A DNA stretch of 64,000 nucleotides, taken from assembly GCA_002269645.1 (NCBI GenBank), contig NIVC01000085.1, forward strand, positions 248,001 to 312,000, written 5' to 3'. The notes below the pieces were generated by a model that searched no databases, was not told the DNA's origin, and worked only from the letters and a program-made list of their open reading frames with translations. Both the position numbers and the translations under genes were made by a program. Below, in pieces: positions 1-40,765 of this stretch (within the stretch, counting starts at the first letter, position 1; each line of letters begins with the position of its first letter). The stretch is from Macrostomum lignano. Taxonomy: Eukaryota.

Positions 1-577
1 ATACATTTCTTGGCTGTGTACAGTGTGGTGTATGGCAACTGGCGTAGATATATATATAAAGATTTTTTTGTGCTTTTTCTGTGTTAAGTTATTTCAAAAA
101 CTATTTTCTCATTTACTAATCATTTTAATTACCGGAATTGTCACAACAATTGTCATGTTATCAATTTTTTGTAGTTTAAATTTGAATTTAAATATTCGTT
201 GATTTTTTTGACCATTTTTATTAAAAATGGCATACATTTAAAATCTGTTGGCATACCATTGAAAATTCAATAAAAATATGTCCGGCGTACACAGAAAACC
301 TTTTGCAATATGGGCCTTGATCAATATGAAGTAATATATTAAAAGTTAATATAAAATCTATTTTATATTCCTAAATATTTTTTTAATATTGAATATACTT
401 GAATTTTTTATAAAAGATATCAATTTCTTTATTATTTGTCTGATTTTATTATGTGTTAGTAAGACATATTTTTACTCAGGCAAATAATATTATTGAAATA
501 GAATTTAAATCTAAAAAATTAATATAAAATCTCAATAGAGTCCTAATTTCTTAATTTTTTTAGAGACAAGGGGGTTA

Positions 578-783
578 TATGCACCCTGGTGCACTTTAAG
601 CAACATAGGCACACAACCGGCGAGAGGCATTACTGCATATTCTGCCGACTAATTGCCATTAATTGCACAAGCAAAGCCAAGCCGAGATTCCAATTCAGCC
701 TCAAATTAATGACTGCACTTGGAATCAAGCCTGGGTTGCTGGCATACCAGAGCAGCTGCGTTACTGCTGGGCTACAGCCCTCC
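578..783 (-). mobile_element. tRNA-derived SINE remnant
   Basis: The minus strand reads GGGCTGTAGCCCAGCAGTAACGCAGC...CCCAGGCTTGATTCC, a degenerate A box and B box of a tRNA-like head. No intact cloverleaf. Confidence 0.45.
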
Positions 784-1012
784 TAATTGCCTGGTATTAA
801 AAAGCATAAGAACCAAAAGCATATATACCCTTTCCTCTAGCCTAGAAATAGAATAATAAATATCTGTGATACAAATATTTTAATAATATTTTTTTATTAA
901 TAATAGCATTACATTATAGTTCTTATTTATAGTCTATCAGTAGTATTAACATTTTTAATCTAAACAAATTTTGCACCTTAATCTTCAAATCTTAGGCCTA
1001 GTTTGAAATAAA

Positions 1013-1080
1013 ATGATAAATATTACTTGGAAACCTTATGACTATTAAAAAAACAGAATGTATTTTATTTGCTAATCTGA
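1013..1080 (+). ncRNA. Box C/D snoRNA class B, degenerate copy
   Basis: C-like ATGATAA, guide CTTGGAAACCT (1 mismatch to the class B guide), D' ATGA, D CTGA at 1077. Confidence 0.55.
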
Positions 1081-1275
1081 TTAATATAAAAGTTAGAAGT
1101 GGCTATTAAAGATATTGTTTTCACTTTGTATTTGTATCTTATTATATTGATAAAAACATTTTCCTATGCAGATATCTTGGCTATTTTTGTAGAAGACTAG
1201 TATAAAATTACCAAAAAGGTTTGTGCATTATTTAAAATATTGTTTTTTTCCATTTCCTAGGTTGAAAAGTAACAT

Positions 1276-1341
1276 ATGATGACAAAAATTGGGACACCTT
1301 TTGATTTAAATTGATACTAACAACAAGTTACCTTTATCTGA
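1276..1341 (+). ncRNA. Box C/D snoRNA class A2 (SNORD58-like guide; predicted 28S Um4227 equivalent)
   Basis: ATGATGA...TTGGGACACCTT-TTGA...GTTACCTTT-AT-CTGA. Confidence 0.8.
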
Positions 1342-1556
1342 ATACATCTATATCTTTTTTGAAGCTATTGCTTATTTCAATATTAAGTCAATAAACATTA
1401 TTAAATTTATTTTTTCGCATTTCCAGATAAATATCCAATGAAGAAAATCTTGTCATCAATGATGATTATAATAAAGTGGTAAGTTCAATGACTCCAATTA
1501 ATTATCATTGTTTAAAAAATTAACTTTTTGAATTAGTTATATAGATTTATTCTTAC

Positions 1557-1633
1557 ATGATGACAATATACTCTTGGGACACCTCTGAGTCTAAATTACC
1601 ATGACTTCACTTTAACCAGTTACCTTTTGCTGA
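1557..1633 (+). ncRNA. Box C/D snoRNA class A1 (SNORD58/U58-like; predicted 28S Gm4228 equivalent)
   Basis: ATGATGA...CTTGGGACACCT-CTGA...GTTACCTTTTG-CTGA. The guide closely resembles the human U58 guide TTAGGACACCT (recalled). Confidence 0.85.
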
Positions 1634-2202
1634 TTTTACATTTGTACATTAGTAGTTTAACTATATCTGTGTATGCTTAAATTACAAAAAGTTATTGCCT
1701 ACTTGTTTTAGAATCATCAATGAATATTGGTCCTGGAATATAGGCCATGTAAATTGATATTTGGTAAGCTATGCTGTTCTTTTTCAAAGACTTAAAGCAG
1801 TTAATTTGAAATTTATAATAGGGCTTTTTACAGTTCTAACATAGTTTGAAATATAGCAATGGGATTATGGGAAGTTACATTATGCATATGTTTTAGAAAA
1901 TATATCGATAATAGGTGCCGGAACAGAAACACACAAGTTTTTTTCCATGTGCATTATGCATCATATATACACAAAGTTGGAGATTACACTGGTTATTCTA
2001 CAATAAATAAATGAGACACTTGATGAGTGCCCAGTTAAACTATTGCTGTCACTCTTTAAATCCTCACTATATTATATTGAATGATACAGGAACTTTTGGC
2101 ATTGAATTTGACATCATTAAAAGATAGGAAAAAGTTCTTAAAACTTCATTAGCTATGGTATGGCAATATGCATGAATAGCTATAAAGGATTTTTAGTAAT
2201 GA

Positions 2203-2267
2203 ATGATTAAAAAATGCTTACGGCGATCCAACTGATCACTTTTTATGAATGTCACTTTCACCTATGA
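2203..2267 (+). ncRNA. Box C/D snoRNA class C (18S helix 23 region; variant C/D boxes)
   Basis: ATGATTA...CTTACGGCGATCCAA-CTGA...ATGAAT...TTTCACCT-ATGA. Confidence 0.8.
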
Positions 2268-2485
2268 CAGGCTATATTGTCTAATCTAAGCCTAATCTAG
2301 TCCAAGTTTCCAACATGATTGACATAACATGTGCATTGATTTTTTTAGGATGTGTCAGCAGATATCTGCATTTATATATTGGACCAATCAGTGCTTTTTG
2401 GTTTAAAAAAGGTAACTTTCTTCTGTGTACTTTGTTGTAGTTTTCCAATATATAGAAAAAATTATTTTATTTATAATTTATGAAT

Positions 2486-2560
2486 ATGATGATACAATCT
2501 TTGGAGACCTTATGATCATCTTGAATAAGACTTGAATGATTTTAGTTACCATTTTTCTGA
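2486..2560 (+). ncRNA. Box C/D snoRNA class B with class-A 3' element (chimeric)
   Basis: ATGATGA...TTGGAGACCTT-ATGA...TAGTTACC...CTGA. Confidence 0.8.
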
Positions 2561-2776
2561 GCCATATCCACTTGGAATTGAATTTTTAAAGAAATATTTG
2601 ATTGATATAATTATTTTATTGCAAGTGCATATGTTTTCAACCTTTTCAGATTTTAGATTTTTATAGTCACATTGAAAGCCTACAAGACCAGGTAAATAGC
2701 ATTATTTTTATTCTTGAATTGCTTAATAATTATGCAAGATTTTAGATTATTATATTATTCTGTGCAGCTGAAAACT

Positions 2777-2840
2777 ATGATTAAAAAATGCTTACGGCGA
2801 TCCAACAGATCCCAGTAATGAATGACATTTTCACCTATGA
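2777..2840 (+). ncRNA. Box C/D snoRNA class C
   Basis: ATGATTA...CTTACGGCGATCCAA-CAGA...TTTCACCT-ATGA. Confidence 0.8.
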
Positions 2841-3033
2841 GAGAGGCACTCAACCAAATTAATTACAGTGAACAAGTTTATTTATTTACGAAAAATTAAT
2901 GCTTTATTTTCACTTTTCACTTTTATTTTAGATATCCTGCAGATTGCAGAACTAATGGTCATGATTTACCTTATAGTAAGTTTCATTTGCATTATTTTTT
3001 GTTTTGCAAAAATCGTTAATAAACATAAATAAA

Positions 3034-3099
3034 ATGATGAAAAAACTTGGAGACCTTTTGACTTCGTTTGATTGTGTGAAAAGTTTTTTAAAACTCTGA
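3034..3099 (+). ncRNA. Box C/D snoRNA class B (28S AGGUCUCCAAG site)
   Basis: ATGATGA...CTTGGAGACCTT-TTGA...CTGA at 3096. Confidence 0.8.
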
Positions 3100-3295
3100 A
3101 TAGATTTTTTTGCATAAAGATTTGTTTTACCAAAAAGATCAAGTATTTGAAGTATTTTTATCTATTTTTTTCAGATTTTCACTGTGCTATGACAATTGAG
3201 GCAGCTGAGCTGAGCAAAGTCCAACTGAAACAGTTAGGTAATTTTTTGCTATTTTCAACTTCTATTTTTGTTTAACTATACAGTGTACATGGCAA

Positions 3296-3367
3296 ATGAT
3301 GACAAACATTTGGGACACCTTCTGATCAAATTGAAATGACCTGTGCTTCTAGTTACCTTTGTGCTGA
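3296..3367 (+). ncRNA. Box C/D snoRNA class A2
   Basis: ATGATGA...TTTGGGACACCTT-CTGA...GTTACCTTTGTG-CTGA. Confidence 0.85.
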
Positions 3368-3541
3368 TAAACATTTTTATGATAGTAACTACGCGTATGA
3401 ATCATTAAATTGTGTATGTTTTACTAAATTTTTAAAATCATTTTTACTTTTCAGAAGGCAAATTTAACCTTGAGATTAATCTAAGTAAGTTAATTATTGA
3501 CATGGTACAGTATTGTATTTATCATTAGCATATTAATTGTA

Positions 3542-3621
3542 ATGATGACAAATAACTCTTGGGACACCTCTGAGTCGAAACTTAAAGCAATGATTTCACA
3601 GTTCTAGTTACCTTTGTCTGA
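3542..3621 (+). ncRNA. Box C/D snoRNA class A1
   Basis: ATGATGA...CTCTTGGGACACCT-CTGA...GTTACCTTTGT-CTGA. Confidence 0.85.
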
Positions 3622-3882
3622 TTTTTTTGTTAGATTAAAATATTTCTTGGTCTCATCATTTAAATTGAATTTGTAGTAACCACAGCTTAATTTTTTAAAT
3701 AATACTTTAAATTTCAGAGTTTGCTAACAAAAGAAAATGCAAAGCGTTGGTCAATCAACTCCAGTGTAGTACTTTAGCAATGTAAGTATTGATTAAGCAT
3801 GTATTGAATATACATTGACACAGTTTATCTGTAGTCACTGATATGCTTGCAAAATGGGCAAATACTGTATATAGATGAACCT

Positions 3883-3948
3883 GTGATTAGAAATTGCTTA
3901 CGGCGATCCAACTGATGTTTTCCTTATGAATGACACTTTCACCTATGA
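3883..3948 (+). ncRNA. Box C/D snoRNA class C
   Basis: GTGATTA...CTTACGGCGATCCAA-CTGA...ATGAATGA...TTTCACCT-ATGA. Confidence 0.8.
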
Positions 3949-4157
3949 GGTTAAGTTATCATTGATCTTGATTATAATAAGAAATTTATACTTTAATTTA
4001 ATTACAATTATTAAATGTATTTTTTTCATTAATAATTGCAGAAAATATCGGTGTTTTTCTAGGCATACTACTTATGGTGAGTAAGCTTGTTGTGTTTTTT
4101 TGTTAATCTTAAAAATTAGACCCCTTATAGTAATTTTATTAAAGCATTTAGGCTCAA

Positions 4158-4225
4158 ATGATGACAAAAATTGGGACACCTTCTGATCAATTGATTTGAT
4201 TTTTAATTCTAAGTTACCTTTCTGA
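4158..4225 (+). ncRNA. Box C/D snoRNA class A2
   Basis: ATGATGA...TTGGGACACCTT-CTGA...GTTACCTTT-CTGA. Confidence 0.85.
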
Positions 4226-4422
4226 GTAATTATCTATGCCATTTGTATGGACTCAACTTTGATACAATTTACAACAAATTTGAAAATGGTTAAATCATAT
4301 TCAACTATTTCAGCTTACAAAAATTGGAATACTTTCTACTGCCAAATATTTGGTAAGTTATTTAACATGAAATTACATTTCAAACTCGTATGTTTGATGG
4401 ATAAAGCTAGTCATAGTTTTTA

Positions 4423-4488
4423 ATGATGAAAACTCTTGGGACACCTCTGAGTGACAGTGACTTCAATTTTCTAGTTACCTTTGTCTGA
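4423..4488 (+). ncRNA. Box C/D snoRNA class A1
   Basis: ATGATGA...CTCTTGGGACACCT-CTGA...GTTACCTTTGT-CTGA. Confidence 0.85.
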
Positions 4489-4710
4489 TCTTTGTTTATA
4501 TTTTAATAATTTTGTCTTTCATCATTTCACCTACTTCAGAGTGAATTAATTAGCGCAAACATAACTTCATTTTTCTATATATTTCAGCTCAAAGATCAGC
4601 GTCCAAGAGAAATGCAAAAATTGATTATACGTTATAATCTTCACCAGTGAAACTTGCAATGTAAGTAGCGATTTCAAGAATGCATTTTTTTAGTTACTGT
4701 AGCATACCTT

Positions 4711-6025
4711 GCCTCCCAGATCCTCAGTTGCTGGGCCAGCCTCCCAGATCCTCAGTTTATGGGCCAGCCTCCCAGAGTGTCAGTTGCTCGGCCAGCCTCC
4801 CAGATCCTCAGTTTATGGGCCAGCGTCCCAGAGTGTCAGTTGCTCGGCCAGCCTCTCAGATCCTCAGTTTATGGGCCAGCGTCCCAGAGTGTCAGTTGCT
4901 CGGCCAGCCTCCCAGATCCTCAGTTTATGGGCCAGCGTCCCAGAGTGTCAGTTGCTCGGCCAGCCTCCCAGATCCTCAGTTTATGGGCCAGCGTCCCAGA
5001 GTGTCAGTTGCTCGGCCAGCCTCCCAGATCCTCAGTTTATGGGCCAGCGTCCCAGAGTGTCAGTTGCTCGGCCAGCCTCTCAGATCCTCTGTTGCTGGGC
5101 CAGCCTCCCACATCCTCAGTTGCTGGGCCAGCTTCACATCCTCAGTTGCTGAGTAAGCCTCTCACATCCTCAGTTGCTGGGCCAGCCTCTCAGATCCTCT
5201 GTTGCTGGGCCAGCCTCCCACATCCTCAGTTGATGGGCCAGCTTCACATCCTCAGTTGCTGAGTCAGCCTCTCACATCCTCAGTTGCTGGGCCAGCCTCT
5301 CACATCCTTAGTTGCTGGGCCAGCCTCTCACATCCTCAGTTGCTGAGTCAGCCTCCCAGATCCTCAGTTGCTAAGCCAGCCTCCCAGATCCTCAGTTGCT
5401 GGGCCAGCCTCCCAGATCCTAAGTTACTAGGCCAGCCCCCCAGATCCTCAATTGCTGGGCCAGCCTCTCACATCGTCAGTTGCTGAGTCAGCCTCCCAGA
5501 TCCTCAGTTGCTAAGCCAGCCTCCCAGATCCTCAGTTTATGGGCCAGCCTCTCAGATCCTCTGTTGCTGGGCCAGCCTCCCAGATCCTCAGTTGATGGGC
5601 CAGCTTCACATCCTCAGTTGCTGAGTCAGCCTCTCACATCCTCAGTTGCTGGGCCAGCCTCTCAGATCCTCTGTTGCTGGGCCAGCCTCCCACATCCTCA
5701 GTTGATGGGCCAGCTTCACATCCTCAGTTGCTGAGTCAGCCTCTCACATCCTCAGTTGCTGGGCCAGCCTCTCACATCCTCAGTTGCTGGGCCAGCCTCT
5801 CACATCCTCAGTTGCTGAGTCAGCCTCCCAGATCCTCAGTTGCTAAGCCAGCCTCCCAGATCCTCAGTTGCTGGGCTAGCCTCCCAGATCCTCAGTTGCT
5901 GGGCCAGCCTCCCAGATCCTCAGTTGCTGGGCCAGCCTCCCAGATCCTCAGTTACTAGGCCAGCCCCCCAGATCCTCAATTGCTGGGCCAGCCTCTCACA
6001 TCCTCAGTTGCTGGGCCAGCCTCTA
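4711..6025. repeat. Intronic minisatellite, ~27-28 bp unit (CCTCAGTTGCTGGGCCAGCCTCCCAGAT)
   Basis: Tandem array upstream of the class C snoRNA within its intron. The same family occurs at 7153 and 20683. Confidence 0.95.
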
Positions 6026-6059
6026 CCTACGCCCCTAAGTGTTTCATATTGATCTACCT

Positions 6060-6127
6060 GTGATTAGAAGATGCTTACGGCGATCCAACAGAACTTTAAA
6101 GTTTATGAATGACACTATCACCTATGA
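6060..6127 (+). ncRNA. Box C/D snoRNA class C
   Basis: GTGATTA...CTTACGGCGATCCAA-CAGA...TATCACCT-ATGA. Confidence 0.75.
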
Positions 6128-6291
6128 GGTTAATAGAAATTTACAAATTTTCGTATTCAATCGAAAAAGTCAAGTGATTTAAAATATTTTTTCAACTTTT
6201 TTGCAGAAAAAATTGTGTATTTTCCGTGGTATACTACTCATGGTGAGTACCAAGTTTTATCACTACTTACTATACAGTCCCCACCTTATCA

Positions 6292-6366
6292 ATGATGAAA
6301 AAAACTTGGAGACCTTATTACTGCTTCAAATGAGGCAGTTTGATTTTTAATTATTTGCATTTCTGA
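6292..6366 (+). ncRNA. Box C/D snoRNA class B (degenerate D' ATTA)
   Basis: ATGATGA...CTTGGAGACCTT-ATTA, internal hairpin ACTGCTTCA/TGAGGCAGT, D CTGA at 6363. Confidence 0.7.
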
Positions 6367-6562
6367 AAACAGTGTAGAATTTATCTAACGAAATATATAT
6401 CCAAAGTTTCTTATCTGTAGCAACTTCATACTAATTTCAATAAATTGTCGTTACCCTAGCAATTTTCTTTTTTCAATTTCAGATGCCTTATTGCACCGGT
6501 TTTTCCCTAAGAAATTGTAAGTTTGTTTATCAGTATTGTGACACTTAGATCCTCCAATTGTT

Positions 6563-6635
6563 ATGATGACGTAACCTTTGGGACACCTTCTGATCTATCA
6601 AATTTGATTTTGACCCCAAGTTACCTTTTCTCTGA
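6563..6635 (+). ncRNA. Box C/D snoRNA class A2
   Basis: ATGATGA...TTTGGGACACCTT-CTGA...GTTACCTTTTCT-CTGA. Confidence 0.85.
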
Positions 6636-6825
6636 TTAATCAGCTGCGTTACTGTAATGTCATGCACTTTTACTGCTTTAGATTACAGTTTCAAAAATAA
6701 TTTCAACTATGAATTTCAGATTATCAAAGTTCTTGTCTGCAGATGTCACATCAGCTGGTGTTGATGGGGTAAGTAATGCACTATATGTTAGTTTGTTATG
6801 CCATTTCTTTTCTTTCTATATCTAA

Positions 6826-6904
6826 ATGATGACAAAACTCTTGGGACACCTCTGAGTTGAATTACTTTAACTGTGAATTGGTCTTACAAGTTACCTTTCT
6901 CTGA
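6826..6904 (+). ncRNA. Box C/D snoRNA class A1
   Basis: ATGATGA...CTCTTGGGACACCT-CTGA...GTTACCTTTCT-CTGA. Confidence 0.85.
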
Positions 6905-7152
6905 CTAGTTATGCGAATGCCTATTGAAATAGTATGTTTTTGTTCCTGGTTTTTGTTGCTAAATTTATTAATGAAATTCCTATTTTTTAGATTGATCATG
7001 ATTTCCTTGAGTTGTAGCGTGGATATATATATATAAATATATATATAAGCCCTGCCGTTTATGTGAGTTAGTAACCTAATCATTTTTTATACTATGCTAT
7101 AAATATGGTATTTATACTGGTTAGGCTGTGTGGGTTGTCATACGATTGAGCT

Positions 7153-7710
7153 CCTCAATTGCTGGGCCAGCCTCCCAGAGTTTCAGTTGCTGGGCCAGCC
7201 TCCCAGAGTTTCAGTTGCTGGGCCAGCCTCCCAGAGTTTCAGTTGCTGGGCCAGCCTCCCAGAGTTTCAGTTGCTGGGCCAGCCTCCCAGATCCTCAGTT
7301 GCTGGGCTAGCCTCCCAGATTTTCAGTTGCTGGGCCAGCCTCCCAGATCTTTAGTTGCTGGGCCAGCCTCCCAGAGTGTCAGTTGCTGGGCCAGCCTCCC
7401 TGTGTGTCAGTTGCTGGGCCAGCCTTCCTGGTGTCAGTTGCTGGGCCAGCCTCCCTGTGTGTCAGTTGCTGGGCCAGCCTTCCTGGTGTCAGTTGCTGGG
7501 CCAGCCTCCCAGATCTTCAGTTGCTGGGCCAGCCTCCCAGAGTGTCAGTTGCTGGGCCAGCCTCCCAGATCCTCAGTTGCTGGGCCAGCCTCCCAGAGTG
7601 TCAGTTGCTGGGCCAGCCTCCCAGAGTGTCAGTTGCTGGGCCAGCCTCTCAGATCCTCAGTTGCTGGGCCAGCCTCCCACATCCTCAGTTGCTGGGCCAG
7701 CCTCTCACAT
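7153..7710. repeat. Intronic minisatellite (same 28-bp family as 4711-6025)
   Basis: Tandem CAGTTGCTGGGCCAGCCTCCCAGA units. Confidence 0.95.
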
Positions 7711-7770
7711 CTCTAGAGCCTCTACCTACGCCCCTAAGTGTGTTTCGCACTCGCACATATTGATCTACCT

Positions 7771-7838
7771 GTGATTAGAAAATGCTTACGGCGACCCAAC
7801 AGAACTTTAAAGTTTATGAATGACACTTTCACCTATGA
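7771..7838 (+). ncRNA. Box C/D snoRNA class C (guide mismatch GACCCAA)
   Basis: GTGATTA...CTTACGGCGACCCAA-CAGA...TTTCACCT-ATGA. Confidence 0.7.
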
Positions 7839-7999
7839 GGTTAATAGAAATTTACAAATTTTCTTATTTTATTGACAAAGTCGTGATTTAAAAGATTTTT
7901 TAATACTTTTTGCAGAAAAATTGCGTATTTTCCGTGGTATACTACTCATGGTGAGTACCAAGTTTTATCACTACTTACTATACAGTCCCCACCTTATCA

Positions 8000-8074
8000 A
8001 TGATGAAAAAAACTTGGAGACCTTATTACTGCTTCAAATGAGGCAGTTTGATTTTTAATTATTTGCATTTCTGA
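8000..8074 (+). ncRNA. Box C/D snoRNA class B (duplicate of 6292)
   Basis: Essentially identical to 6292-6366. Confidence 0.7.
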
Positions 8075-8270
8075 AAACAGTGTAGGAGTTTTATAACTAA
8101 ATATATATCTGAAGTTTCATATCTGTAGCAACTTCATACTGATTTCAATAAATTGTCGTTACCCTAGCAATTTTCTTTTTTCAATTTCAGATGTCTTATT
8201 GCACCGGTTTTTCCCTAAGAAATTGTAAGTTTGTTTATCAGTATTGTGACACTTAGATCCTCCAATTGTT

Positions 8271-8343
8271 ATGATGACGTAACCTTTGGGACACCTTCTG
8301 ATCTATCAAATTTGATTTTGACCCCAAGTTACCTTTTCTCTGA
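8271..8343 (+). ncRNA. Box C/D snoRNA class A2 (duplicate of 6563)
   Basis: Essentially identical to 6563-6635. Confidence 0.85.
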
Positions 8344-8534
8344 TTAATCAGCTGCGTTACTGTAATGTCATGCACTTTTACTGCTTTAGATTACAGTTTC
8401 AAAAATAATTTTTAACTATAAATTTCAGATTATCAAAGTTCTTGTCTGCAGATGTCACATCAGCTGGTGTTGATGGGGTAAGTAATGCACTATATGTTAG
8501 TTTGTTATGCCATTTCTTTTCTTTCTATATCTAA

Positions 8535-8613
8535 ATGATGACAAAACTCTTGGGACACCTCTGAGTTGAATTACTTTAACTGTGAATTGGTCTTACAAGT
8601 TACCTTTCTCTGA
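8535..8613 (+). ncRNA. Box C/D snoRNA class A1 (duplicate of 6826)
   Basis: Essentially identical to 6826-6904. Confidence 0.85.
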
Positions 8614-8821
8614 CTAGTTATGCGAATGCCTATTGAAATAGTATGTTTTTGTTCCTGGTTTTTGTTGCTAAATTTATTAATGAAATTCCTATTTTTTAGA
8701 TTTTTCATGATTTCCTCGAGTTGTAGCGTGGATATATATAAGCCCTGCCGTTTATGTGAGTTAGTTACGTAATACTTTTTAATACTATATATACCCTGTG
8801 TAAGCGGACAATGTACGTTGT

Positions 8822-8892
8822 ATGATGAATTAATAAAGAATTCCTCGTTGTTGAGTTTGTCTCAGTGAAATGAGTAATTATTAATAATCTGA
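8822..8892 (+). ncRNA. Box C/D snoRNA class D (predicted 18S Gm1572 equivalent, yeast snR57 site)
   Basis: ATGATGA...GAATTCCTCGTTG-TTGA...CTGA. The guide is antisense to 18S CAACGAGGAAUUC. Confidence 0.8.
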
Positions 8893-9066
8893 CATTTTCT
8901 AGTTGTTTTAAAGCAGTGATAAAGATATGGCTTTAACAATAAATCTTGACTTGCTTTCAATTTTTTGCAGATCGTCTGAAATGTTATTGAAAATATCCAC
9001 GTAGTCAGGTAAGACATCTGATGTTGACTGTAATTTAAATTTCTTAATATAAAACTTTCAAACAAA

Positions 9067-9139
9067 ATGATTTAAGCCTTTTCGGCGATCCAACTGACTC
9101 AAAATATTGAGACCAAGTGATCGATAATTTCACCTATGA
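9067..9139 (+). ncRNA. Box C/D snoRNA class C
   Basis: ATGATTT...CGGCGATCCAA-CTGA...AATTTCACCT-ATGA. Confidence 0.75.
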
Positions 9140-9308
9140 TTGAGTTTTTATATAACCGTATGTAAACTTTTATTTTAGTAATATTTATTTTACAATTTAT
9201 TGCTCACTTTTTTTCAGTGCCTCAGCTGCGGAACCTGGCAATTTGTGAGTTGAATATTTTTTAAACCGAACATTAGAAGCATGTTGTGTCCTCATAGTAA
9301 CAAAAATT

Positions 9309-9381
9309 ATGATGAAATATTGAATTCCTCGTTGTTGATTTTGTTCACTCAGCTAAAATGAAATTATATTTTTCCTACTGA
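9309..9381 (+). ncRNA. Box C/D snoRNA class D
   Basis: ATGATGA...GAATTCCTCGTTG-TTGA...CTGA at 9378. Confidence 0.8.
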
Positions 9382-9584
9382 ATCCATTTTTATTACAAAT
9401 ATATAATATTTGTTAAAATAAGCCGAATTTATAATTGCGTTTATTCTTGCATGATGACAGATTTTAATATTGACCTTTAATGTAATCTTGTAGATCAAAA
9501 CGGACTAAGAGAACTTCATCAATTAATTTTAGGTAAATTTCCCAAGTTTATTACTTGCAGTAGCAGCTAGTTGATGATGCTGAT

Positions 9585-9649
9585 ATGATGAAGAATATTT
9601 CGAATTCCTCGTTGTTGAATTAATGTGAAATGAATATAATTGCACCTGA
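9585..9649 (+). ncRNA. Box C/D snoRNA class D
   Basis: ATGATGA...GAATTCCTCGTTG-TTGA...CTGA at 9646. Confidence 0.8.
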
Positions 9650-10114
9650 ATAAAATTTTTGTCTTCTTTAGAGTGGGTTGTTATGGTATTATTAGCTTTT
9701 ATCCCATTTATCAAAGGCCCCATTTTTTATTTTCAGATTTGCTTGAATATGGATATCTAGAAAATTTTAACTACTGTTGGTAAGTAGGATGAACACCGCT
9801 GAAATTAATTTTATCAGTTGCTTTTAGCTTTAAATCTTAACTATAATTTTTTAACCTGTAATTTTAGAGAATGACCAACTGTCTCTACTACAAGTAATTA
9901 TCAGCAGTCGAACCCTGCGTGAAAAGTACATTTTTACCTAGGAAAAGTGCAATGGTGCTCAGAGTCTGAAGAAACTGACATTTTGTTGTACTCGCGTCTT
10001 TCATACTCTTCCTAATTAATCTAGTTTGCGGAAACACTTAAATATACACAAATTTTACTTTACAGCTTTTTATTTCTAACAGTATTGTGTTATACTCTTT
10101 TATAGGGTCAGGTG

Positions 10115-10760
10115 TGAAATGGCCCATGATCACTATGACCACCATGACCCCCAGGTGTGCAATGGTTTATGATCATTATAACCACTATGGCCCCTAGGTG
10201 TACGTTGGTCTATGATCATTATGACCACCATGACCCCCAGGTGTGCAATGGTCCTTCAGGTATGCAATCATCCATAATCATTATGACCACTATGACCCCC
10301 ATGTGTGCAATGGTCCATTGGTCCATGATTACTGACCCCCTGGTGTACAATGGTCCATGACTGACTACTATGACCCCCAGGTGTCCAATGGTCCATGATC
10401 ATTATGACCCCCAGGTGTCCAATGGTCCATGATCATTATGACCCCCAGGTGTGCAATGGTCCATGATCATTATGACCCCCAGGTGTGCAATGGTCCATGA
10501 TCATTATGACCCCCAGGTGTGCAATGGTCCATGATCATCAATATGACCAATATGACCCCAGGTGTGCAATGGTCCATGATCATCAATATGACCAATATGA
10601 CCCCAGGTGTGCAATGGTCCATGATCATTATGACCACTATGACCCCAGGTGTGCAATGGTCCATGATCATTATGACCACTATGACCCCCAGGTGTGCAAT
10701 GGTCCATGATAATTATGCCCACTATGACCCCTAGGTGTGCAATGGTGCATGATCTCCATG
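10115..10760. repeat. Minisatellite (CATGATCATTATGACC...CCCCAGGTGTGCAATGGTC, ~33-45 bp)
   Basis: Tandem array between the snoRNA host and ARF. Confidence 0.9.
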
Positions 10761-10895: not shown

Positions 10896-15371
<4,476 letters not shown>

Positions 15372-16320: not shown

Positions 16321-16424
16321 ACCAGACAATAAGTAGCTAGAGCGACAATTTCCTTAGCTTTATAGTGGTTCCTTTAAATTAGCATGGCGCTTTATACCTT
16401 TACATTTGAAATTGTATATCTTGA

Positions 16425-19245
16425 ATGTTTGATATGGTGGCTCTTTTATGTTTGACATAGTGGCTCTTCTATGTTTGACATGGTGGCTCTTCTATGTTTG
16501 ACATGGTGGCTCTTTTATGTTTGACATGGTGGCTCTTTTATGTTTGACATGGTGGCTCTTTTATGTTTGACATGGTGGCTCTTTTATGTTTGACATGGTG
16601 GCTCTTTTATGTTTGATATAGTGGCTCTTCTATGTTTGACATGGTGGCTTTTTTATGTTTGACATAGTGGCTCTTCTATGTTTGACATGGTGGCTTTTTT
16701 AGGTTTGACATGGTGGCTCTTTTATGTTTGACATGTTGGCTTTTTAATGTTCGACATGTTGGCTTTTTAATGTTCGACATGGTGGCTCTTTAATGTTCGA
16801 CATGGTGGCTTTTTAATGTTCGACATGGTGGCTCTTTTAGGTTTGAAATGGTGGCTCCTTAATTTTCGAAATGGTGGCTCTTTTATGTTCGACATGGTGG
16901 CTCTTTAATGTTCGACATGGTGGCTCTTTAATGTTCTTAATGGTGTCTGTTTTATGTTTGACATGGTGGCTCTTTATTGTTCGACATGGTGGCTCTTTAA
17001 TTTTTAACGTGGTAACTCTTTTATGTTTGATATGGTGGCACTTTAATGTTCGACATGGTGGCTCTTTAATGTTTGATAAGGTGGCTCTTTAATGTTCGAC
17101 ATGGTGGCTTTTTAATGTTTGACATGGTGGCTCTTTAATGTTCTTAATGGTGGCTCTTTAATGTTTGACATGGTGGCTCTTTAATTTTTGAAATGGTGGC
17201 TGTTTTATGTTCGACATGGTGGCTCTTTAATTTTTAACATGGTGACTCTTTTATGTTCGATATGGTGGCTCTTTTATGTTTGACATAGTGGCTCCTTTAG
17301 GTTTGAAATGGTGGCTCTTAAATGTTTAACATTGTGGCTCTTTAATTTTCGAAATGGTGGCTCCTTAATTTTCGAAATGGTGGCTCTTTTATGTTTGACA
17401 TGGTGGCTCTTTAATGTTCGACATGGTGGCTCTTTAATGTTCGACATGGTGGCTCTTTAATGTTCTTAATGGTGTCTGTTTTATGTTCGACATGGTGGCT
17501 CTTTTATGTTCGACATGGTGGCTCTTTAATGTTCGACATGGTGGCTCCTTTAGGTTTGAAATGGTGGCTCTTTAATGTTTGACATTGTGGCTCTTTAATA
17601 TTTGACAAGGTGGCTCTTTAATGTTCGACATGGTGGCTCCTTAATTTTCGAAATGGTGGCTCCTTAATTTTCGAAATGGTGGCTGTTTTATGTTTGACAT
17701 GGTGGCTCTTTAATGTTCGACATGGTGGCTCTTTAATGTTCGACATGGTGGCTCTTTAATGTTCTTAATGGTGTCTGTTTTATGTTCGACATGGTGGCTC
17801 TTTTATGTTTCACATGGTGGCTCTTTAATGTTCGACATGGTGGCTCCTTTAGGTTTGAAATTTTGGCTCTTTAATGTTTGACATTGTGGCTCTTTAATGT
17901 TTGACATGGTGGCTTTTTAATGTTCGACATGGTGGCTCTTTTAGGTTTGAAACGGTGGCTCTTTAATGTTTGACATGGTGACTCTTTAATGTTTGACATG
18001 GTGGCTCTTGTATGTTCGACATGGTGGCTCCTTTAGGTTTGAAATGGTGGCTCTTTAATGTTTGACATTGTGGCTTTTTAATGTTTGACATGGTGGCTTC
18101 TTAATGTTTGACATGGTGGCTCTTTTAGGTTTGAAATGGTGGCTCTTTAATATTTGACATGGTGGCTTTTTAATGTTTGACATGGTGGCTCTTTTAGATT
18201 TGAAATGGTGGGTGTTTAATGCTTGACAATGTGGCTCTTTAATGTTTGACATGGCTGCTCTTTAATGTTCGATATGGTGGCTCTTTAATGTTTGACATGG
18301 TATCTCTTGTATGTTTGATATGGTGGCTCTTTTATGTTCAACATGGTGGCTCTTTAATGTTTGACATGGTGGCTTTTGAATGTTCGACATGGTGGCTCTT
18401 TAATGTTTGACATGGTGGCTCTTTTAGGTTTGAAATGGTGGCTCTTTAATGTTCTACATGGTAACTCTTTTATGTTTGATACGGTGGCTTTTTAATGTCT
18501 GACATGTTGTCTCTTTTATGTTTGACATGGTGGCTCTTTAATGTTTGACATGGTAACTCTTTTATGTTTGATATGGTGGCTCTTTTATGTTCGACATGGT
18601 GGCTCTTTAATGTTCGACATGGTGGCTCCTTTAGGTTTGAAATGGTGGCTCTTTAATGTTTGACATTGTGGCTCTTTTATGTTCGACATGGTGGCTCTTA
18701 AATGTTTGACATGGTGGCTCTTTAATGTTTCACATGGTGGCTCTTTAATATTTGACATAAAGTCACATATATGTTTGACATGGTGGCTCCAAATGTTTGA
18801 CATGGTGGCTCTTTATGTTTGACATAGTGGCTCTTTTATGTTCGACATGGTGGATCTTTTTTGTTCTACATGGTAACTCTTTTATGTTTGATACGGTGGC
18901 TTTTTAATGTCTGACATGTTGGCTCTTTTATGTTTGACATGGTGGCTCTTTAATGTTCGACAAAGTGGCTCTTTTATGTTTGACATGGTGGCTCTTAATT
19001 GTTTGACATAGTGGCTCTTTAATGTTCAAAATGGTGGCTCTTTAATGTTTGAAATGGTGGCTCTTTAATGTTCGAAATGGTGGCTGTTTTATGTTTGACA
19101 TGGTGGCTCTTTTATGTTTGACATGGTGGCTCTTTAATGTTCGACATGGTAGCTCTTTAATGTTCGACATGGTGGCTCTTTTATGTTTGACATGGTAACT
19201 CTTTTATGTTCGATATGTTGGCTCTTCTATGTTTGACATTGCGCT
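16425..19245. repeat. 22-23-bp minisatellite (ATGTTTGACATGGTGGCTCTTTA), ~2.8 kb
   Basis: Long tandem array with variant units. Confidence 0.95.
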
Positions 19246-20682
19246 TCTTTGATGTTTAGCAGTTTTGTTGTGTTTTTAAGGTGTTTTAATAAAAAAAATC
19301 TTTTTGCACTACTGAGATTCGAACCCAGGTCGCTACATTATTAGCATTCCAGTCTGTTCGCATCAGGGCTATCTCTTTTCAATTGGAGAACATGAATTGT
19401 GGCCCTTATAATTCAATTCTTACAGCAAGTCAATTGGAGTAAAAAGTTATGACATAATCAATTTCTCAGTCAGCCAGTATCAGTCTCAATTTAAGTTAGC
19501 AATATGGTTACGCAATTTCAATCAAGTCGTGTGTGCATTTCTTCGGCACTGTTTTCAACTTGTTGTGATGCAATCTTTAGCACAATCGGAATTCAGTCAG
19601 TCAGTTTTTTCTCTAGCATTCTTACAATGCATTTCAAGTCGAAAATTTGGCTTGACCTTTGCAAAAAAGCATGTTTATCGAATATTTAATCCCTTTAACA
19701 TTGAGCAATTTCTTAGCCAGGATGCATGTACCGTGCCAGGAAAATTTCTGATCAAATGGTGCAAGTTTGAAGAAAATCGGTTGAGCCAATTTTTCTGAAA
19801 TCTATCGCATACCGACAGACAACTCATTTTTAGTATATAGGATGTGTTAATTTCTACTAGTGAATGGCTGAACAGTAGCTTAACAGGGACACGATTCTCT
19901 TTTTTGTGTTTTTTTATCATAAAATCTATTAATAGTAACAAGTGAGTTATTCAGATTTTTTTGATTTTCTCCCCTTACTAAGTTTCGTTGTTGTTGGCAA
20001 AGATTATAACAAAATCTTGTCTCTCTGATGCCGGCTTTTAAACTTTGTTTTAATTCTGTTGTGTTGCCCCACACCCTCGGATCTGTTTGTCACTCGCTTC
20101 CCCTTCCTTGTGTTTATTCTGTTCCCAACAGTTTTCCTTGTTTTAAATTTGTGATCCCGCTGCGTCAAACATTTGAAATTCCAACAAACAATTCACCGCT
20201 TTTATTCGTGAACAAAAAATAATAAATAACTACTATATAGTAGTACTAAAGAAATGTAGCCTTTTAATTTTTAATTTCCTTTATTCGTTTTTTATGCCAG
20301 ACTGATGTGATGTGATAAATATTTGATTACAATTTAATAATATTGACTAACAACAAATGTCCCTAATTAATACTACTGATGAGAGTAGCAGAGAGCGTTC
20401 TTGACTCCACTTTAATTTATCTGCTTTAATAAGCGAAATAAGTGACTTGTTTAAATGTTCACTCCTACTGAATAGTAGTATTTGCAGTGATCCGACTGCA
20501 GCTGTTTGGCTGTGGCTGAATTTAATAAATATAATCATAAATAATATCCGAATCAAAGTACCATTACTGACGTACAATATTTATTATCTATAACTGATGC
20601 ACTTAAAATGTGGTTATAAATGTGCCTCAAGTTTTCCTCTGCCACTTTCCGTGTCATTGTTTTTATTCAGTGAAATTCTGCA

Positions 20683-40600: not shown

Positions 40601-40765
40601 GTCAGTCCCAAGTGAGACTGTGTCAGTCCCAAGTGAGACTGTGTCAGTCCCCAGTGAGACTGTGTCAGTTCCCAAGTGAAACTGTGTCAGTTCCCAAGTG
40701 AGACTGTGTCAGTTCCAAGTGAGACTGTGTCAGTTCCCAAGTGAAACTGTGTCAGTTCCCAAGTG
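34610..40765. repeat. ~6-kb 21-22-bp minisatellite (GAGACTGTGTCAGTTCCAAGT), interrupted at 38730-39608
   Basis: Seen directly; shows higher-order internal duplication and a TTCC-to-TCCC variant gradient. Confidence 0.95.
38730..39608. mobile_element. 879-bp solo-LTR-like insertion with 5-bp TSD (AGACT) and TATAAG...CTTATA ends
   Basis: AGACT at 38725-38729 and 39609-39613; 6-bp terminal inverted repeat; non-coding interior with a minus-strand TATAAATA near 39194-39201. Confidence 0.6.

What the first reader, a model, noticed from the sequence alone, without database searches (positions are those of the whole stretch)
1013..9649. Modular array of 24 intronic C/D snoRNAs (5 classes) in a non-coding micro-exon host gene
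Seen: 24 C/D units, one per intron, in the order B,A2,A1,C,B,C,B,A2,A1,C,A2,A1,C,B,A2,A1,C,B,A2,A1,D,C,D,D, i.e. repeated expansion of a C-B-A2-A1 module. Guides are conserved across copies while exons and the rest of each intron have diverged, the signature of selection on the RNAs. Known: GAS5/UHG-type hosts usually carry many different snoRNAs with few copies each. Inference: here a handful of guides is amplified 3-6-fold in one transcript, possibly for dosage of specific rRNA modifications in a lineage whose snoRNA repertoire is poorly described.
Basis: partly seen in the sequence, partly recalled or inferred. Interest (0 to 1): 0.85.

Follow-up and report, generated by a model that had tools for sequence, protein, structure and literature searches.

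The report
Flatworm host gene with 24 snoRNAs
This stretch of the flatworm Macrostomum lignano genome looks like a non-coding gene whose 24 short introns each carry one small guide RNA for ribosomal RNA methylation, a familiar gene design with unusually many copies of only four guide families.

Summary
There are 24 box C/D units, all on the + strand at 1013-9649, in the stated order. 17 have canonical RUGAUGA...CUGA boxes, against 0.3 expected by chance and none on the - strand. Each unit sits 75-116 nt upstream of a strong predicted 3' splice site. The predicted exons are 27-73 nt, and the spliced product has no ORF above 88 aa. Outside one recent 1.6-kb duplication, paralogous copies are similar only within the snoRNA (0.67-0.77 identity); their flanks are at background (0.51).

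The guides match real eukaryotic rRNA fetched from metagenomes:
- A1/A2: the 28S U-G pair that is Um4227/Gm4228 in human (SNORD58 site), with a 1-nt register shift between the two classes.
- B: 28S AGGUCUCCAAG.
- C: 18S helix 23 region, through two adjacent elements, with unusual covarying boxes (UGAUUA/AUGA).
- D: the equivalent of yeast 18S Gm1572 (snR57 site).

The window comes from Macrostomum lignano.

No class reaches an Rfam threshold. Expression, splicing and methylation could not be tested, and neither could this species' own rRNA. The architecture resembles Drosophila Uhg genes and GAS5/UHG, so I class it as a new member of a known kind. The dosage idea remains an inference.

The parts
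794..839 (+). Candidate core promoter: TATA-like TATTAAAA (about 795) and a pyrimidine-tract start CCCTTTCCTCT (829-839). This could be a TOP/TCT-type start of the host transcript. It follows a unique 270-bp GC-richer block (560-830).
   Evidence: Read from the sequence. Inference only; exon 1 and its donor could not be defined.
1013..1080 (+). Unit 1, class B, probably decayed. The C box is AUGAUAA and the guide is CUUGGAAACCUU (G>A next to the target position).
1276..1341 (+). Unit 2, class A2 (guide UUGGGACACCUU + UUGA; second element AGUUACCUU)
   Evidence: weak SNORD58 match, 24 bits
1557..1633 (+). Unit 3, class A1 (guide CUCUUGGGACACCU + CUGA; second element AGUUACCUUUUG + CUGA)
2203..2267 (+). 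Unit 4, class C (C box AUGAUUA, D' guide GCUUACGGCGAUCCAA + CUGA, D guide UUUCACCU + AUGA)
2486..2560 (+). Unit 5, class B (guide CUUUGGAGACCUU, with one inserted U)
2777..2840 (+). Unit 6, class C (D' box CAGA)
3034..3099 (+). Unit 7, class B (guide AACUUGGAGACCUU + UUGA)
3296..3367 (+). Unit 8, class A2
3542..3621 (+). Unit 9, class A1
   Evidence: weak SNORD58 match
3883..3948 (+). Unit 10, class C (CC/GG terminal pairs, C box GUGAUUA, D box AUGA)
4158..4225 (+). Unit 11, class A2
4423..4488 (+). Unit 12, class A1
6060..6127 (+). Unit 13, class C (D-side element has one change, CACUAUCACCU)
6292..6366 (+). Unit 14, class B (the D' position reads AUUA)
6563..6635 (+). Unit 15, class A2
6826..6904 (+). 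Unit 16, class A1
7771..7838 (+). Unit 17, class C, recent duplicate of unit 13. Its D' guide has U>C at the position that should pair with the target A.
8000..8074 (+). Unit 18, class B, recent duplicate of unit 14
8271..8343 (+). Unit 19, class A2, recent duplicate of unit 15
8535..8613 (+). Unit 20, class A1, recent duplicate of unit 16
8822..8892 (+). Unit 21, class D (guide GAAUUCCUCGUUG + UUGA)
9067..9139 (+). Unit 22, divergent class C (C box AUGAUUU; only CGGCGAUCCAA and UUUCACCU are shared with the other C copies)
9309..9381 (+). Unit 23, class D
9585..9649 (+). Unit 24, class D
1172..9779 (+). 24 predicted micro-exons (27-73 nt): 1172-1218, 1427-1478, 1712-1763, 2349-2411, 2650-2691, 2932-2975, 3175-3237, 3455-3484, 3718-3781, 4042-4076, 4314-4352, 4588-4660, 6207-6242, 6483-6516, 6720-6768, 6991-7062, 7916-7950, 8191-8224, 8429-8477, 8700-8755, 8971-9008, 9218-9244, 9494-9532, 9737-9779. 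All are bounded by AG...GT.
   Evidence: splice-site table; D box to 3' splice site 75-116 nt; donor strand bias; no long ORF. Predicted from the sequence, with no RNA evidence.
9868..10060 (+). Predicted last exon, after a snoRNA-free 88-nt intron (9780-9867). The 3' end is undefined and no AATAAA was seen.
   Evidence: inference
4711..6023 (+). 28-bp minisatellite (47 copies) in the intron upstream of unit 13. The snoRNA still lies 79 nt from the 3' splice site.
7155..7704 (+). The same 28-bp minisatellite (20 copies) in the intron upstream of unit 17

Best explanation
The region is a non-coding multi-snoRNA host gene of the UHG/GAS5/Drosophila Uhg type in the flatworm Macrostomum lignano.

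Proposed mechanism (inferred):
- RNA polymerase II transcribes the + strand, starting upstream of about 1000, possibly at the pyrimidine tract at 829.
- About 25 short introns are spliced out.
- In 23-24 of them a box C/D snoRNP assembles on the C/D kink-turn, about 75-115 nt upstream of the 3' splice site.
- After debranching, exonucleases trim the intron to a stable RNA of about 65-85 nt. The spliced micro-exon RNA is a by-product.

Shown by sequence: the snoRNAs fall into four guide families whose antisense elements end at a D' or D box and match conserved rRNA.
- A1 and A2 pair with 28S AGGUGUCC(C/U)AAG. Their guides sit one nucleotide apart relative to the D' box. They should therefore methylate the adjacent G and U, which are human Gm4228 and Um4227.
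- A second conserved element in class A (GUUACCUUU) pairs with AAAGGUAAC, 2 nt upstream on the rRNA. It is either an accessory helix or a second guide.
- B pairs with 28S AGGUCUCCAAG.
- C pairs with two adjacent 18S segments, AGGUGAAA and UUGGAUCGCCG(UAAG). It carries a compensated non-canonical kink-turn: C box UGAUUA with D box AUGA, so the usual G-C pair is replaced by U-A.
- D pairs with 18S (C)AACGAGGAAUUC and points to the equivalent of yeast Gm1572.

The array grew by tandem duplication of a B-A2-A1-C module, most recently a 1.6-kb copy. Selection has kept the boxes and guides of most old copies while everything else drifted to background. This suggests, but does not prove, that copy number matters.
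For: Boxes and strand: 17 canonical C...D pairs on + versus 0 on -, against 0.29 expected. All 24 units are co-oriented.

Splicing signals: every inter-unit interval has one AG...GT-bounded micro-exon. Strong donors number 17 on + and 2 on -, against 2.9 simulated.

Position in the intron: the distance from the D box to the 3' splice site is 75-116 nt in all 24 introns. This holds even where the intron is 853 or 1546 nt long, because the extra DNA lies upstream of the snoRNA. It matches the rule of about 70 nt described for vertebrates and for Drosophila DmSnR60 (PMC1821038).

No coding capacity: there are stops in all frames, the longest spliced ORF is 88 aa, it has no Pfam hit and no homologue.

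Selective conservation: unit identity is 0.67-0.77 and flank identity 0.49-0.55, against a background of 0.51. BLAST hits between old copies end at the unit borders. Boxes and guides are the invariant columns.

rRNA complementarity against real eukaryotic rDNA from metagenomes:
- Perfect Watson-Crick runs of 13, 11, 11, 11 and 12 nt for the five D' guides. The fraction of shuffled guides that do as well is 0 to 0.007.
- Of 21 antisense matches in the whole window to 11-mers conserved in four rDNA units, 14 fall inside the units. The sense-strand control gives 5 matches in all, 1 of them in a unit.
- The second elements of classes A and C map directly beside the first target.
- 21 of 120 18S loci carry GCCGUAAG, which extends the class C duplex to 15 bp. 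This stretch was not part of the search pattern.

Site identities:
- The class D target G lies 67 nt upstream of the decoding-centre C in 62 of 62 loci, equal to 1639-1572 in yeast (PMC4344503; PMC8583080).
- The only U-G step in the SNORD58-complementary segment is the A2/A1 pair. It corresponds to human Um4227 (guide listed as unknown) and Gm4228 (SNORD58), and to Arabidopsis Um2651/Gm2652.

Organism.
Against: No RNA data of any kind were available, so expression, splicing, stable 65-85-nt products and the predicted methylations are all untested.

The species' own rRNA was not available. The targets were checked on other eukaryotes' rRNA.

Terminal stems next to the C and D boxes are no better than a mismatched control (2.2 versus 2.2 bp).

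No unit reaches any Rfam gathering score.

The internal D' boxes of classes B and D are non-canonical (AUGA/UUGA/AUUA and UUGA). For B the exact target nucleotide is therefore ambiguous.

The predicted sites of class C, and the canonical-rule site of class B, are not known methylation sites in yeast, human, Arabidopsis or Drosophila. The class C sites are also absent from the planarian 18S map; the planarian map does not cover the 28S region that B targets.

The 88-aa ORF is somewhat longer than in shuffles (2% of shuffles reach it).

Exon 1 and the poly(A) site are undefined.
Confidence: 0.85

Rival explanations
1. The units are real snoRNAs, but the high copy number is a neutral by-product of a genome prone to tandem duplication and is not selected for dosage. 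Several copies are redundant or already decaying.
For: The window is saturated with minisatellites (57 TRF rows). Two of them lie inside host introns. A 1.6-kb segment was duplicated recently. Unit 1 is degenerate. In the recent pair, unit 13 and unit 17 have each picked up a mutation in a different guide, as expected under relaxed constraint.
Against: Old copies have flanks at background identity yet keep their boxes and guides intact. Each has therefore been under purifying selection for a long time, which is not expected for surplus copies.
Confidence: 0.35
2. The snoRNAs are released from a long polycistronic precursor by endonucleases and exonucleases without splicing, as in plants or trypanosomes, or are transcribed one by one. 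In that case the 'micro-exons' are not real exons.
For: No RNA evidence for splicing is available. Terminal stems are weak. M. lignano is known to trans-splice (my own knowledge), so unusual processing is conceivable.
Against: Strong donor and acceptor consensus occurs in every interval, with a marked strand bias. The snoRNA keeps a fixed distance to the predicted 3' splice site whatever the intron length. No upstream promoter element is conserved: the 60 nt before each unit are at background identity.
Confidence: 0.07
3. The array is a silent relic: snoRNA pseudogenes or a dead host gene that is no longer transcribed.
For: There are no expression data. Unit 1 is degenerate, unit 17 is mutated at the key guide position, and no Rfam family is matched.
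Against: Conservation is confined to boxes and guides while flanks are randomised. Splice signals are intact at 24 exons. A dead locus would have lost both.
Confidence: 0.05
4. The host gene is protein-coding or encodes a micropeptide, for example the 88-aa ORF spanning exons 8-13.
For: Only 2% of shuffled transcripts reach an ORF as long as 88 aa.
Against: The ORF has no Pfam domain and no homologue among 5.8 billion proteins. Stops occur in all frames across the rest of the transcript. Exons are at background similarity between module copies, apart from exon 11 versus exons 14/18.
Confidence: 0.03

Closest known systems
Drosophila Uhg (dUHG) non-coding snoRNA host genes, and the DmSnR60a-d cluster in minifly (mfl)
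   Same: There is one C/D snoRNA per intron, with several isoforms of the same guide produced by tandem duplication. The snoRNAs lie about 70 nt upstream of the 3' splice site. The guides target rRNA, some with bipartite complementarity. The host is non-coding, or the cluster sits in a UTR (PMC1821038; PMC11014333).
   Different: Drosophila families have at most about 4 copies, and each of the seven Uhg genes hosts a broader mix. Here only four guide families fill 24 introns, with 10, 5, 6 and 3 copies. There is no sequence homology of host or snoRNAs beyond the guides.
Vertebrate UHG (SNHG1) and GAS5
   Same: The host is non-coding with short, poorly conserved exons and snoRNAs in the introns. 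A TOP-type start is possible here (candidate CCCTTTCCTCT at 829). This comparison rests on established knowledge of these genes, not on a test made here.
   Different: Those hosts carry about 8-10 different snoRNAs, essentially one copy each. Here a module is repeated. A TOP start and NMD sensitivity were not tested.
Mammalian SNORD115/SNORD116 (and SNORD113/114) tandem arrays
   Same: Tens of C/D snoRNA copies lie one per intron in a long non-coding host and arose by tandem duplication (PMC3413130, PMC12429941).
   Different: Those arrays are near-uniform repeats of a single orphan snoRNA without rRNA complementarity, and they are imprinted. This array mixes four rRNA-targeting families, and the non-snoRNA parts have diverged completely.
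SNORD58 (human, 28S Gm4228) and AtsnoR10 (Arabidopsis, 25S Um2651)
   Same: The class A D' guide matches the SNORD58 guide region in the Rfam alignment and pairs with the same 28S segment. A1 points to the G and A2 to the neighbouring U, the two positions methylated in human and Arabidopsis.
   Different: The Rfam score is 24 bits against a 42-bit threshold, so this is not a demonstrable family member. In M. lignano the two activities are carried by sister paralogues that differ by a 1-nt register. The extra GUUACCUUU element is not part of the SNORD58 consensus.
Yeast snR57 (18S Gm1572)
   Same: Class D points to the same nucleotide. It lies 67 nt upstream of the decoding-centre C in 62 of 62 18S loci, equal to the Gm1572-Cm1639 spacing in yeast.
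   Different: No Rfam snR57 match at E<=10. The site is not listed as methylated in human, Drosophila or Arabidopsis.
snoRNAs with additional pre-rRNA base-pairing (van Nues et al. 2011, PMC3116282; van Nues and Watkins 2017, PMC5389607)
   Same: Classes A and C each carry a second conserved antisense element. It pairs with the rRNA directly beside the main target, as in the accessory helices that stimulate methylation.
   Different: I saw only the titles and abstracts of these papers. Whether the second elements here are accessory helices or independent guides is undecided. In class A the distance from that element to the D box varies from 1 to 4 nt.

Membership tests
Box C/D snoRNA | C box RUGAUGA near the 5' end and D box CUGA near the 3' end, 60-100 nt apart | tested here: met
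   17 of 24 units are canonical. Six class C units have UGAUU(A/U) with AUGA, where the usual G6-C1 pair of the kink-turn is replaced by U-A. Unit 1 is degenerate (AUGAUAA). Unit length is 64-80 nt.
Box C/D snoRNA | Antisense element of at least 10 nt ending at the D or D' box and complementary to rRNA or snRNA | tested here: met
   Watson-Crick runs of 11-13 nt to real eukaryotic 18S/28S for all five D' guides. Shuffled guides reach this in 0-0.7% of trials. Antisense matches are enriched inside the units. The rRNA of M. lignano itself was not available.
Box C/D snoRNA | Short terminal stem bringing the C and D boxes together | tested here: not met
   Mean 2.2 bp, the same as for mismatched flank pairs. 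Only class C has a consistent CC/GG pair. Many intronic metazoan C/D snoRNAs also lack this stem, so this is a weak negative.
Box C/D snoRNA | Internal D' and C' boxes | tested here: inconclusive
   D' is CUGA or CAGA in classes A and C, but AUGA/UUGA/AUUA in B and UUGA in D. C'-like UGA motifs are present but degenerate.
Box C/D snoRNA | Stable RNA of about 70-90 nt bound by fibrillarin, NOP56, NOP58 and SNU13 | not testable with these tools
   No RNA or protein data.
Non-coding multi-snoRNA host gene (UHG/GAS5/Uhg type) | One snoRNA per intron, placed about 70-80 nt upstream of the 3' splice site | tested here: met
   24 units in 24 predicted introns. The D box to 3' splice site distance is 75-116 nt (median about 86) whatever the intron length, 199-1546 nt. 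The exon upstream of unit 1 is not defined.
Non-coding multi-snoRNA host gene (UHG/GAS5/Uhg type) | Spliced RNA without a conserved long ORF; exons less conserved than the snoRNAs | tested here: met
   Longest ORF 88 aa, with no Pfam hit and no homologue. Exons of old module copies are at background similarity, except exon 11 versus exons 14/18.
Non-coding multi-snoRNA host gene (UHG/GAS5/Uhg type) | 5' terminal oligopyrimidine (TOP) transcription start | tested here: inconclusive
   A candidate CCCTTTCCTCT lies at 829-839, about 30 nt after a TATA-like motif. There are no transcription-start data.
Non-coding multi-snoRNA host gene (UHG/GAS5/Uhg type) | Transcribed, spliced, polyadenylated host RNA | not testable with these tools
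   Look-ups of window ORFs in assembly collections returned nothing. The spliced 88-aa ORF has no database match, which says nothing either way.
SNORD58 (Rfam RF00151) | Covariance-model score at or above the gathering threshold (42 bits) | tested here: not met
   Best scores are 24.0 and 23.5 bits for units 2 and 9.
SNORD58 (Rfam RF00151) | D' guide complementary to 28S around Gm4228 | tested here: met
   The guide aligns with the consensus guide CUUAGGACACCU and pairs with AGGUGUCC(C/U)AAG in real 28S.
snR57 / SNORD55 / SNORD34 / other Rfam families (classes B, C, D) | Covariance-model score at or above the gathering threshold | tested here: not met
   B: best match snR56, 25.7 versus 54 bits. 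C: best match SNORD73, 19.4 versus 42 bits. D: nothing relevant.
SNORD115/116-type imprinted arrays | Near-uniform tandem repeat of one orphan snoRNA without rRNA complementarity | tested here: not met
   There are four families with clear rRNA complementarity, and the repeat units are heterogeneous.

The most novel reading that the evidence does not exclude
The locus holds two things that are new in detail.

(1) Class C may be an undescribed C/D family. Its kink-turn carries a compensated U-A pair in place of the canonical G-C (C box UGAUUA, D box AUGA). Two adjacent antisense elements clamp the helix-23 region of 18S, at Rfam SSU model G913 in a hairpin loop and A924 in an internal loop. It would direct methylations specific to flatworms, or to this lineage, or act as a folding chaperone. 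No methylation is known at these positions in yeast, human, Arabidopsis, Drosophila or planarian.

(2) The A2/A1 pair shows how one ancestral guide can be duplicated and shifted by one nucleotide to produce the conserved neighbouring Um/Gm pair of 28S. The guide for the U is still listed as unknown in human.

In this reading, the retention of 5-6 intact copies per guide reflects selection for a high snoRNA dose.
Probability: 0.25. Interest if true: 0.55.

Novelty: new member of a known kind. Interest (0 to 1): 0.4.

Why it matters
Flatworm snoRNAs are almost undescribed. Homology searches in schistosomes found only U3 (PMC2770079), and I found no snoRNA description for Macrostomum. This locus gives 23-24 concrete candidates with predicted targets in a regeneration model organism. 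In planarians, fibrillarin-dependent rRNA methylation has been linked to cell-lineage-specific translation (PMC11649923).

The locus also gives a clean within-gene example of selection acting only on boxes and guides. It offers a natural test of the one-nucleotide register rule through the A1/A2 pair, and a candidate non-canonical but compensated C/D kink-turn in class C. If copy number proves to be selected, it would be an rRNA-targeting counterpart to the orphan SNORD115/116 arrays.

The gene design itself is not new.

Tried and rejected
- Rfam at gathering thresholds over the whole window gave 0 hits. E-value mode on the array and on single units gave only sub-threshold, mostly generic C/D matches.
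- The plasmodium_snoR28 match at 8978-9054 lacks both boxes. The mir-1277 match at 7001-7070 is a (TA)n palindrome. I reject both as spurious.
- The viral-contig scan for a 28S pattern found nothing.
- Six exact-protein look-ups, meant to find other assemblies or alleles of the locus, returned nothing.
- A search of 5.8 billion proteins with the spliced 88-aa ORF, in the hope of hitting a transcript-derived ORF that would prove five splice junctions, found nothing.
- An RNAduplex-based significance test timed out. I replaced it with a longest-perfect-run test.
- Terminal-stem analysis gave no signal.
- I first placed the class B target, from memory, near yeast A2280/A2281 (the U15/snR13 region). 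The Rfam LSU alignment, together with the Arabidopsis table, shows that it lies about 420 nt further upstream. It is next to Arabidopsis Gm1855 and Cm1860 (human Cm2804), so I withdrew the earlier placement.
- I tested whether planarian-specific Gm866 or Gm936 could be the class C sites. The cross-species table gives offsets of 56-60 to human numbering, which puts the predicted sites at about 872-876 and 883-887, so there is no match.
- tRNA search found none. The upstream GC-richer block at 560-830 is not repeated elsewhere in the window.

Full report
**1. What is in the sequence**

Reading 1-10500 and searching for the conserved motifs gives:
- ten copies of TGGGACACCT followed, further on, by AGTTACCTT (class A);
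- five copies of CTTGG(A/G)AGACCTT-like guides (class B);
- six copies of CGGCGA(T/C)CCAAC followed, further on, by TCACCTATGA (class C);
- three copies of GAATTCCTCGTTGTTGA (class D).

All are on the + strand and none lies elsewhere in the 64-kb window.

Seventeen units have RTGATGA followed 45-75 nt later by CTGA. The - strand of the same region has none. A first-order Markov model of the region gives 0.29 on average and at most 4. The other seven are the six class C units, which have variant boxes, and unit 1 (AUGAUAA).

Class A splits cleanly into two forms that always occur as an A2-A1 pair. A1 reads ...CUCUUGGGACACCU|CUGA. A2 reads ...UUGGGACACCUU|CUGA.

**2. Gene structure**

Every interval between units contains one short segment preceded by a pyrimidine-rich tract plus AG and followed by GTAAGT, GTGAGT or a close variant. 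There are 24 such micro-exons of 27-73 nt.

Strong donors (GT[AG]AGT) number 17 on the + strand and 2 on the - strand, against 2.9 in simulations.

The most telling figure is the distance from the end of the D box to the predicted 3' splice site. It is 75-116 nt in all 24 cases (median about 86). The distance from the 5' splice site to the C box ranges from 46 to 1399 nt. In the two introns swollen by a 28-bp minisatellite (1546 and 853 nt), the extra DNA lies upstream of the snoRNA. This is the positional rule described for splicing-dependent assembly of intronic C/D snoRNPs in vertebrates and for the Drosophila DmSnR60 cluster (PMC1821038).

The concatenated exons, about 1.3 kb, have stops in all frames. 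The longest ATG ORF is 88 aa, a length reached by 2% of shuffles. That ORF has no Pfam domain and no homologue in a 5.8-billion-protein collection.

A last 88-nt intron (9780-9867) has no snoRNA. The first exon could not be defined. A TATA-like motif followed by CCCTTTCCTCT at 829 is a possible TOP-type start, but this is inference only.

**3. Selection on the RNAs**

Alignments by class show that the invariant columns are the boxes and the antisense elements. The spacer between D' and C' varies freely, as does the D-side region of classes B and D.

Excluding the recent duplicates, mean pairwise identity is 0.67-0.77 inside units. In the 60 nt on either side it is 0.49-0.55, the same as for random 60-mers from the region (0.51 +/- 0.04). 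Self-BLAST hits between old copies begin and end at the unit borders, for example 2203-2267 versus 2777-2840.

The exception is a recent 1.6-kb duplication (5442-7031 versus 7149-8740). Its unique part is 95.6% identical, and it produced units 17-20 from units 13-16.

Residual exon similarity outside that duplication is limited to the exon after class C, exon 11 versus exons 14 and 18. This fits duplication of a B-A2-A1-C module. The A1/A2 split predates the module copies.

Signs of decay exist:
- unit 1 has a degenerate C box and a guide mutation;
- unit 17 has a mismatch at the nucleotide that should pair with the target;
- unit 13 has a change in its D-side element.

Terminal stems are not detectable above a control.

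**4. Targets**

No rRNA is in the window. I predicted the class C target from memory of 18S and scanned metagenome contigs for GGTGAAATTCTTGGATCGCCG. More than 120 contigs matched. Rfam shows that these are eukaryotic rDNA, and four contain complete 18S-5.8S-28S units.

Against these real rRNAs:
- the A1 guide pairs with 28S AGGTGTCCCAAGA (13 bp in L054; one or two G-U pairs in the others);
- the B guide pairs with 28S AGGTCTCCAAG (11 bp in all four units);
- the class C D' guide pairs with 18S TTGGATCGCCG, extended to 15 bp in the 21 loci that read GCCGTAAG, a stretch that was not in my search pattern;
- the class D guide pairs with 18S AACGAGGAATTC (12 bp).

Shuffled guides reach these run lengths in 0-0.7% of 5000 trials each.

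In an unbiased scan, I took the 11-mers shared by all four rDNA units and looked for their antisense matches on the + strand of the whole window. There are 21 such matches, and 14 of them fall inside the units, which cover under 3% of the window. The sense control gives 5 matches, 1 of them in a unit.

The second conserved elements are short: GTTACCTTT in class A (9 nt) and TTTCACCT in class C (8 nt). By length alone the class A element is only borderline (4.8% of shuffles do as well) and the class C element is not significant (38%). Their complements, however, lie immediately 5' of the first target on the rRNA: AAAGGTAAC-GC-AGGTGTCC in 28S, and AGGTGAAA-TTC-TTGGATCG in 18S. That placement is very unlikely by chance.

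**5. Which nucleotides**

I used the rule that the nucleotide paired to the fifth guide position upstream of D or D' is methylated. This is established knowledge and is restated in PMC4344503.

*Class A.* A1 points to the G and A2 to the preceding U of AGGU-GUCC.
- The Rfam SNORD58 consensus guide aligns with the class A guide.
- SNORD58 guides human Gm4228. The adjacent Um4227 is also methylated, and its guide is listed as unknown (PMC11550049).
- The pair is conserved in mouse, Xenopus and zebrafish. In Arabidopsis it is Um2651 (AtsnoR10) and Gm2652, the latter with no guide found (PMC8583080).
- U-G occurs only once in the complementary segment, so the assignment is unambiguous.

*Class D.* It points to the G of CAACG. 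That G lies exactly 67 nt upstream of the C of ACACCGC*CCGTC in 62 of 62 loci. This equals the spacing between yeast Gm1572 (snR57; PMC4344503) and Cm1639.

*Class B.*
- The duplex covers Rfam LSU model positions 1861-1871.
- With Arabidopsis = model - 7, six Arabidopsis methylated positions fall on the right nucleotide. The duplex therefore spans Arabidopsis Gm1855 and Cm1860, the latter being human Cm2804.
- With the NUGA motif as D', the target is the U three nucleotides before that C. This U is not listed as methylated in the yeast, human, mouse, Xenopus, zebrafish, Arabidopsis or Drosophila tables I saw.
- If the degenerate CUUA is the D' box instead, the target is the Cm2804 equivalent.
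- This remains open.

*Class C.* It points to Rfam SSU model G913, in a hairpin loop, and A924, in the adjacent internal loop. No methylation is listed there for yeast, human, Arabidopsis, Drosophila or planarian.

**6. Class C boxes**

All six class C copies combine a C box ending in UU(A/U) instead of UGA with a D box AUGA instead of CUGA. In the C/D kink-turn, C-box position 6 pairs with D-box position 1. This is established structural knowledge. The canonical G-C pair is therefore replaced by U-A, a compensated change consistent with a working kink-turn. I could not find a matching Rfam family: the best match is SNORD73 at 19.4 bits against a threshold of 42.

**7. Organism and context**

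A piggyBac-type transposase ORF at 13225-14556 (-) is 100% identical over 228 aa to a UniRef protein of Macrostomum lignano. That gene model also contains peptides from the Cys-loop channel exon at 24356-24718. The window is therefore this flatworm's genome (lineage).

The literature held here has no description of Macrostomum snoRNAs. For schistosomes, no homologue of any known snoRNA except U3 could be found (PMC2770079). The planarian RiboMeth-seq map covers 18S and only the 5' part of 28S (PMC11649923).

**8. Comparison and verdict**

The design has several known elements: a non-coding host, one C/D snoRNA per intron at a fixed distance from the 3' splice site, and paralogous isoforms from tandem duplication.
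- It is that of Drosophila Uhg genes. There, 42% of the non-intergenic C/D snoRNAs lie in seven Uhg lncRNA genes, and families have up to four copies (PMC11014333).
- It is also that of the DmSnR60 cluster and of vertebrate UHG/GAS5.
- Mammalian SNORD115/116 show that much larger one-per-intron arrays exist, though of orphan snoRNAs.

What is particular here:
- only four guide families fill 24 introns;
- the A1/A2 pair differs by a one-nucleotide register shift;
- classes A and C have bipartite complementarity;
- class C has unusual compensated boxes and an unreported target.

I therefore class the finding as real and as a new member of a known kind. Confidence is high (0.85) for the snoRNA host-gene reading. 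Confidence in the dosage explanation is only moderate. Expression, splicing and methylation remain untested.

Noticed in passing
window 10109-63643 (many places, e.g. 11235-12569, 16419-19257, 34615-40767, 53438-54531): Minisatellite density is extraordinary: TRF reports 57 rows, with periods mostly 12-52 bp, including a 6.1-kb array of a 21-bp unit. Much of the window outside genes is tandem repeat.
   Followed up: partly
window 4711-6023, 7155-7704 and 20684-21371: The same 28-bp minisatellite (GCCTCCCAGATCCTCAGTTGCTGGGCCA) occurs in two host-gene introns and again about 11 kb downstream of the array. It seems to be a dispersed, expanding repeat family.
   Followed up: partly
window 13225-14556 (-): A piggyBac-type transposase ORF (Pfam DDE_Tnp_1_7, E=4e-56). 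It is 100% identical over 228 aa to a Macrostomum lignano UniRef entry whose gene model fuses it with the neighbouring ion-channel exons, probably an annotation artefact.
   Followed up: yes
window 24356-24718 (-) and 30331-30663 (-): Exons of a Cys-loop ligand-gated ion channel: Neur_chan_memb (E=2e-12) and Neur_chan_LBD (E=9e-9).
   Followed up: partly
window 48862-49365 (-) and 51111-51527 (-): Exons of a ubiquitin-specific protease (Pfam UCH, E=2e-15 and 4e-4), separated by a 23-25-bp minisatellite at 49322-51112.
   Followed up: partly
window 43728-45032 (-) and 45780-47570 (-): Two long GC-rich (about 60%), low-complexity ORFs. The first ends in an ALMS motif (Pfam PF15309, E=5e-11). They are probably exons of an ALMS1-like centrosomal protein gene. 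The GC content contrasts sharply with the 28% GC of the snoRNA host gene.
   Followed up: partly
L054 8413-10670, L056 8181-9257, L067 8688-9838: In the metagenomic rDNA contigs fetched for the target test, the intergenic spacer after 28S carries U1, U2 and U5 snRNA genes, and in L054 also 5S rRNA genes. rDNA and snRNA genes are linked in these unidentified eukaryotes.
   Followed up: no
window 763-776, 6641-6654 and 8349-8362: The 14-mer CAGCTGCGTTACTG occurs in the putative promoter block and again just downstream of A2 units 15 and 19. A few such 14-mer repeats are expected by chance in 64 kb, so it is probably meaningless.
   Followed up: no
window 1764-2348: The intron holding unit 4 has 439 nt of unique sequence upstream of the snoRNA and no minisatellite. 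It may hide a further micro-exon (e.g. around 1897-1914) or an unrecognised RNA. Rfam found nothing there.
   Followed up: no
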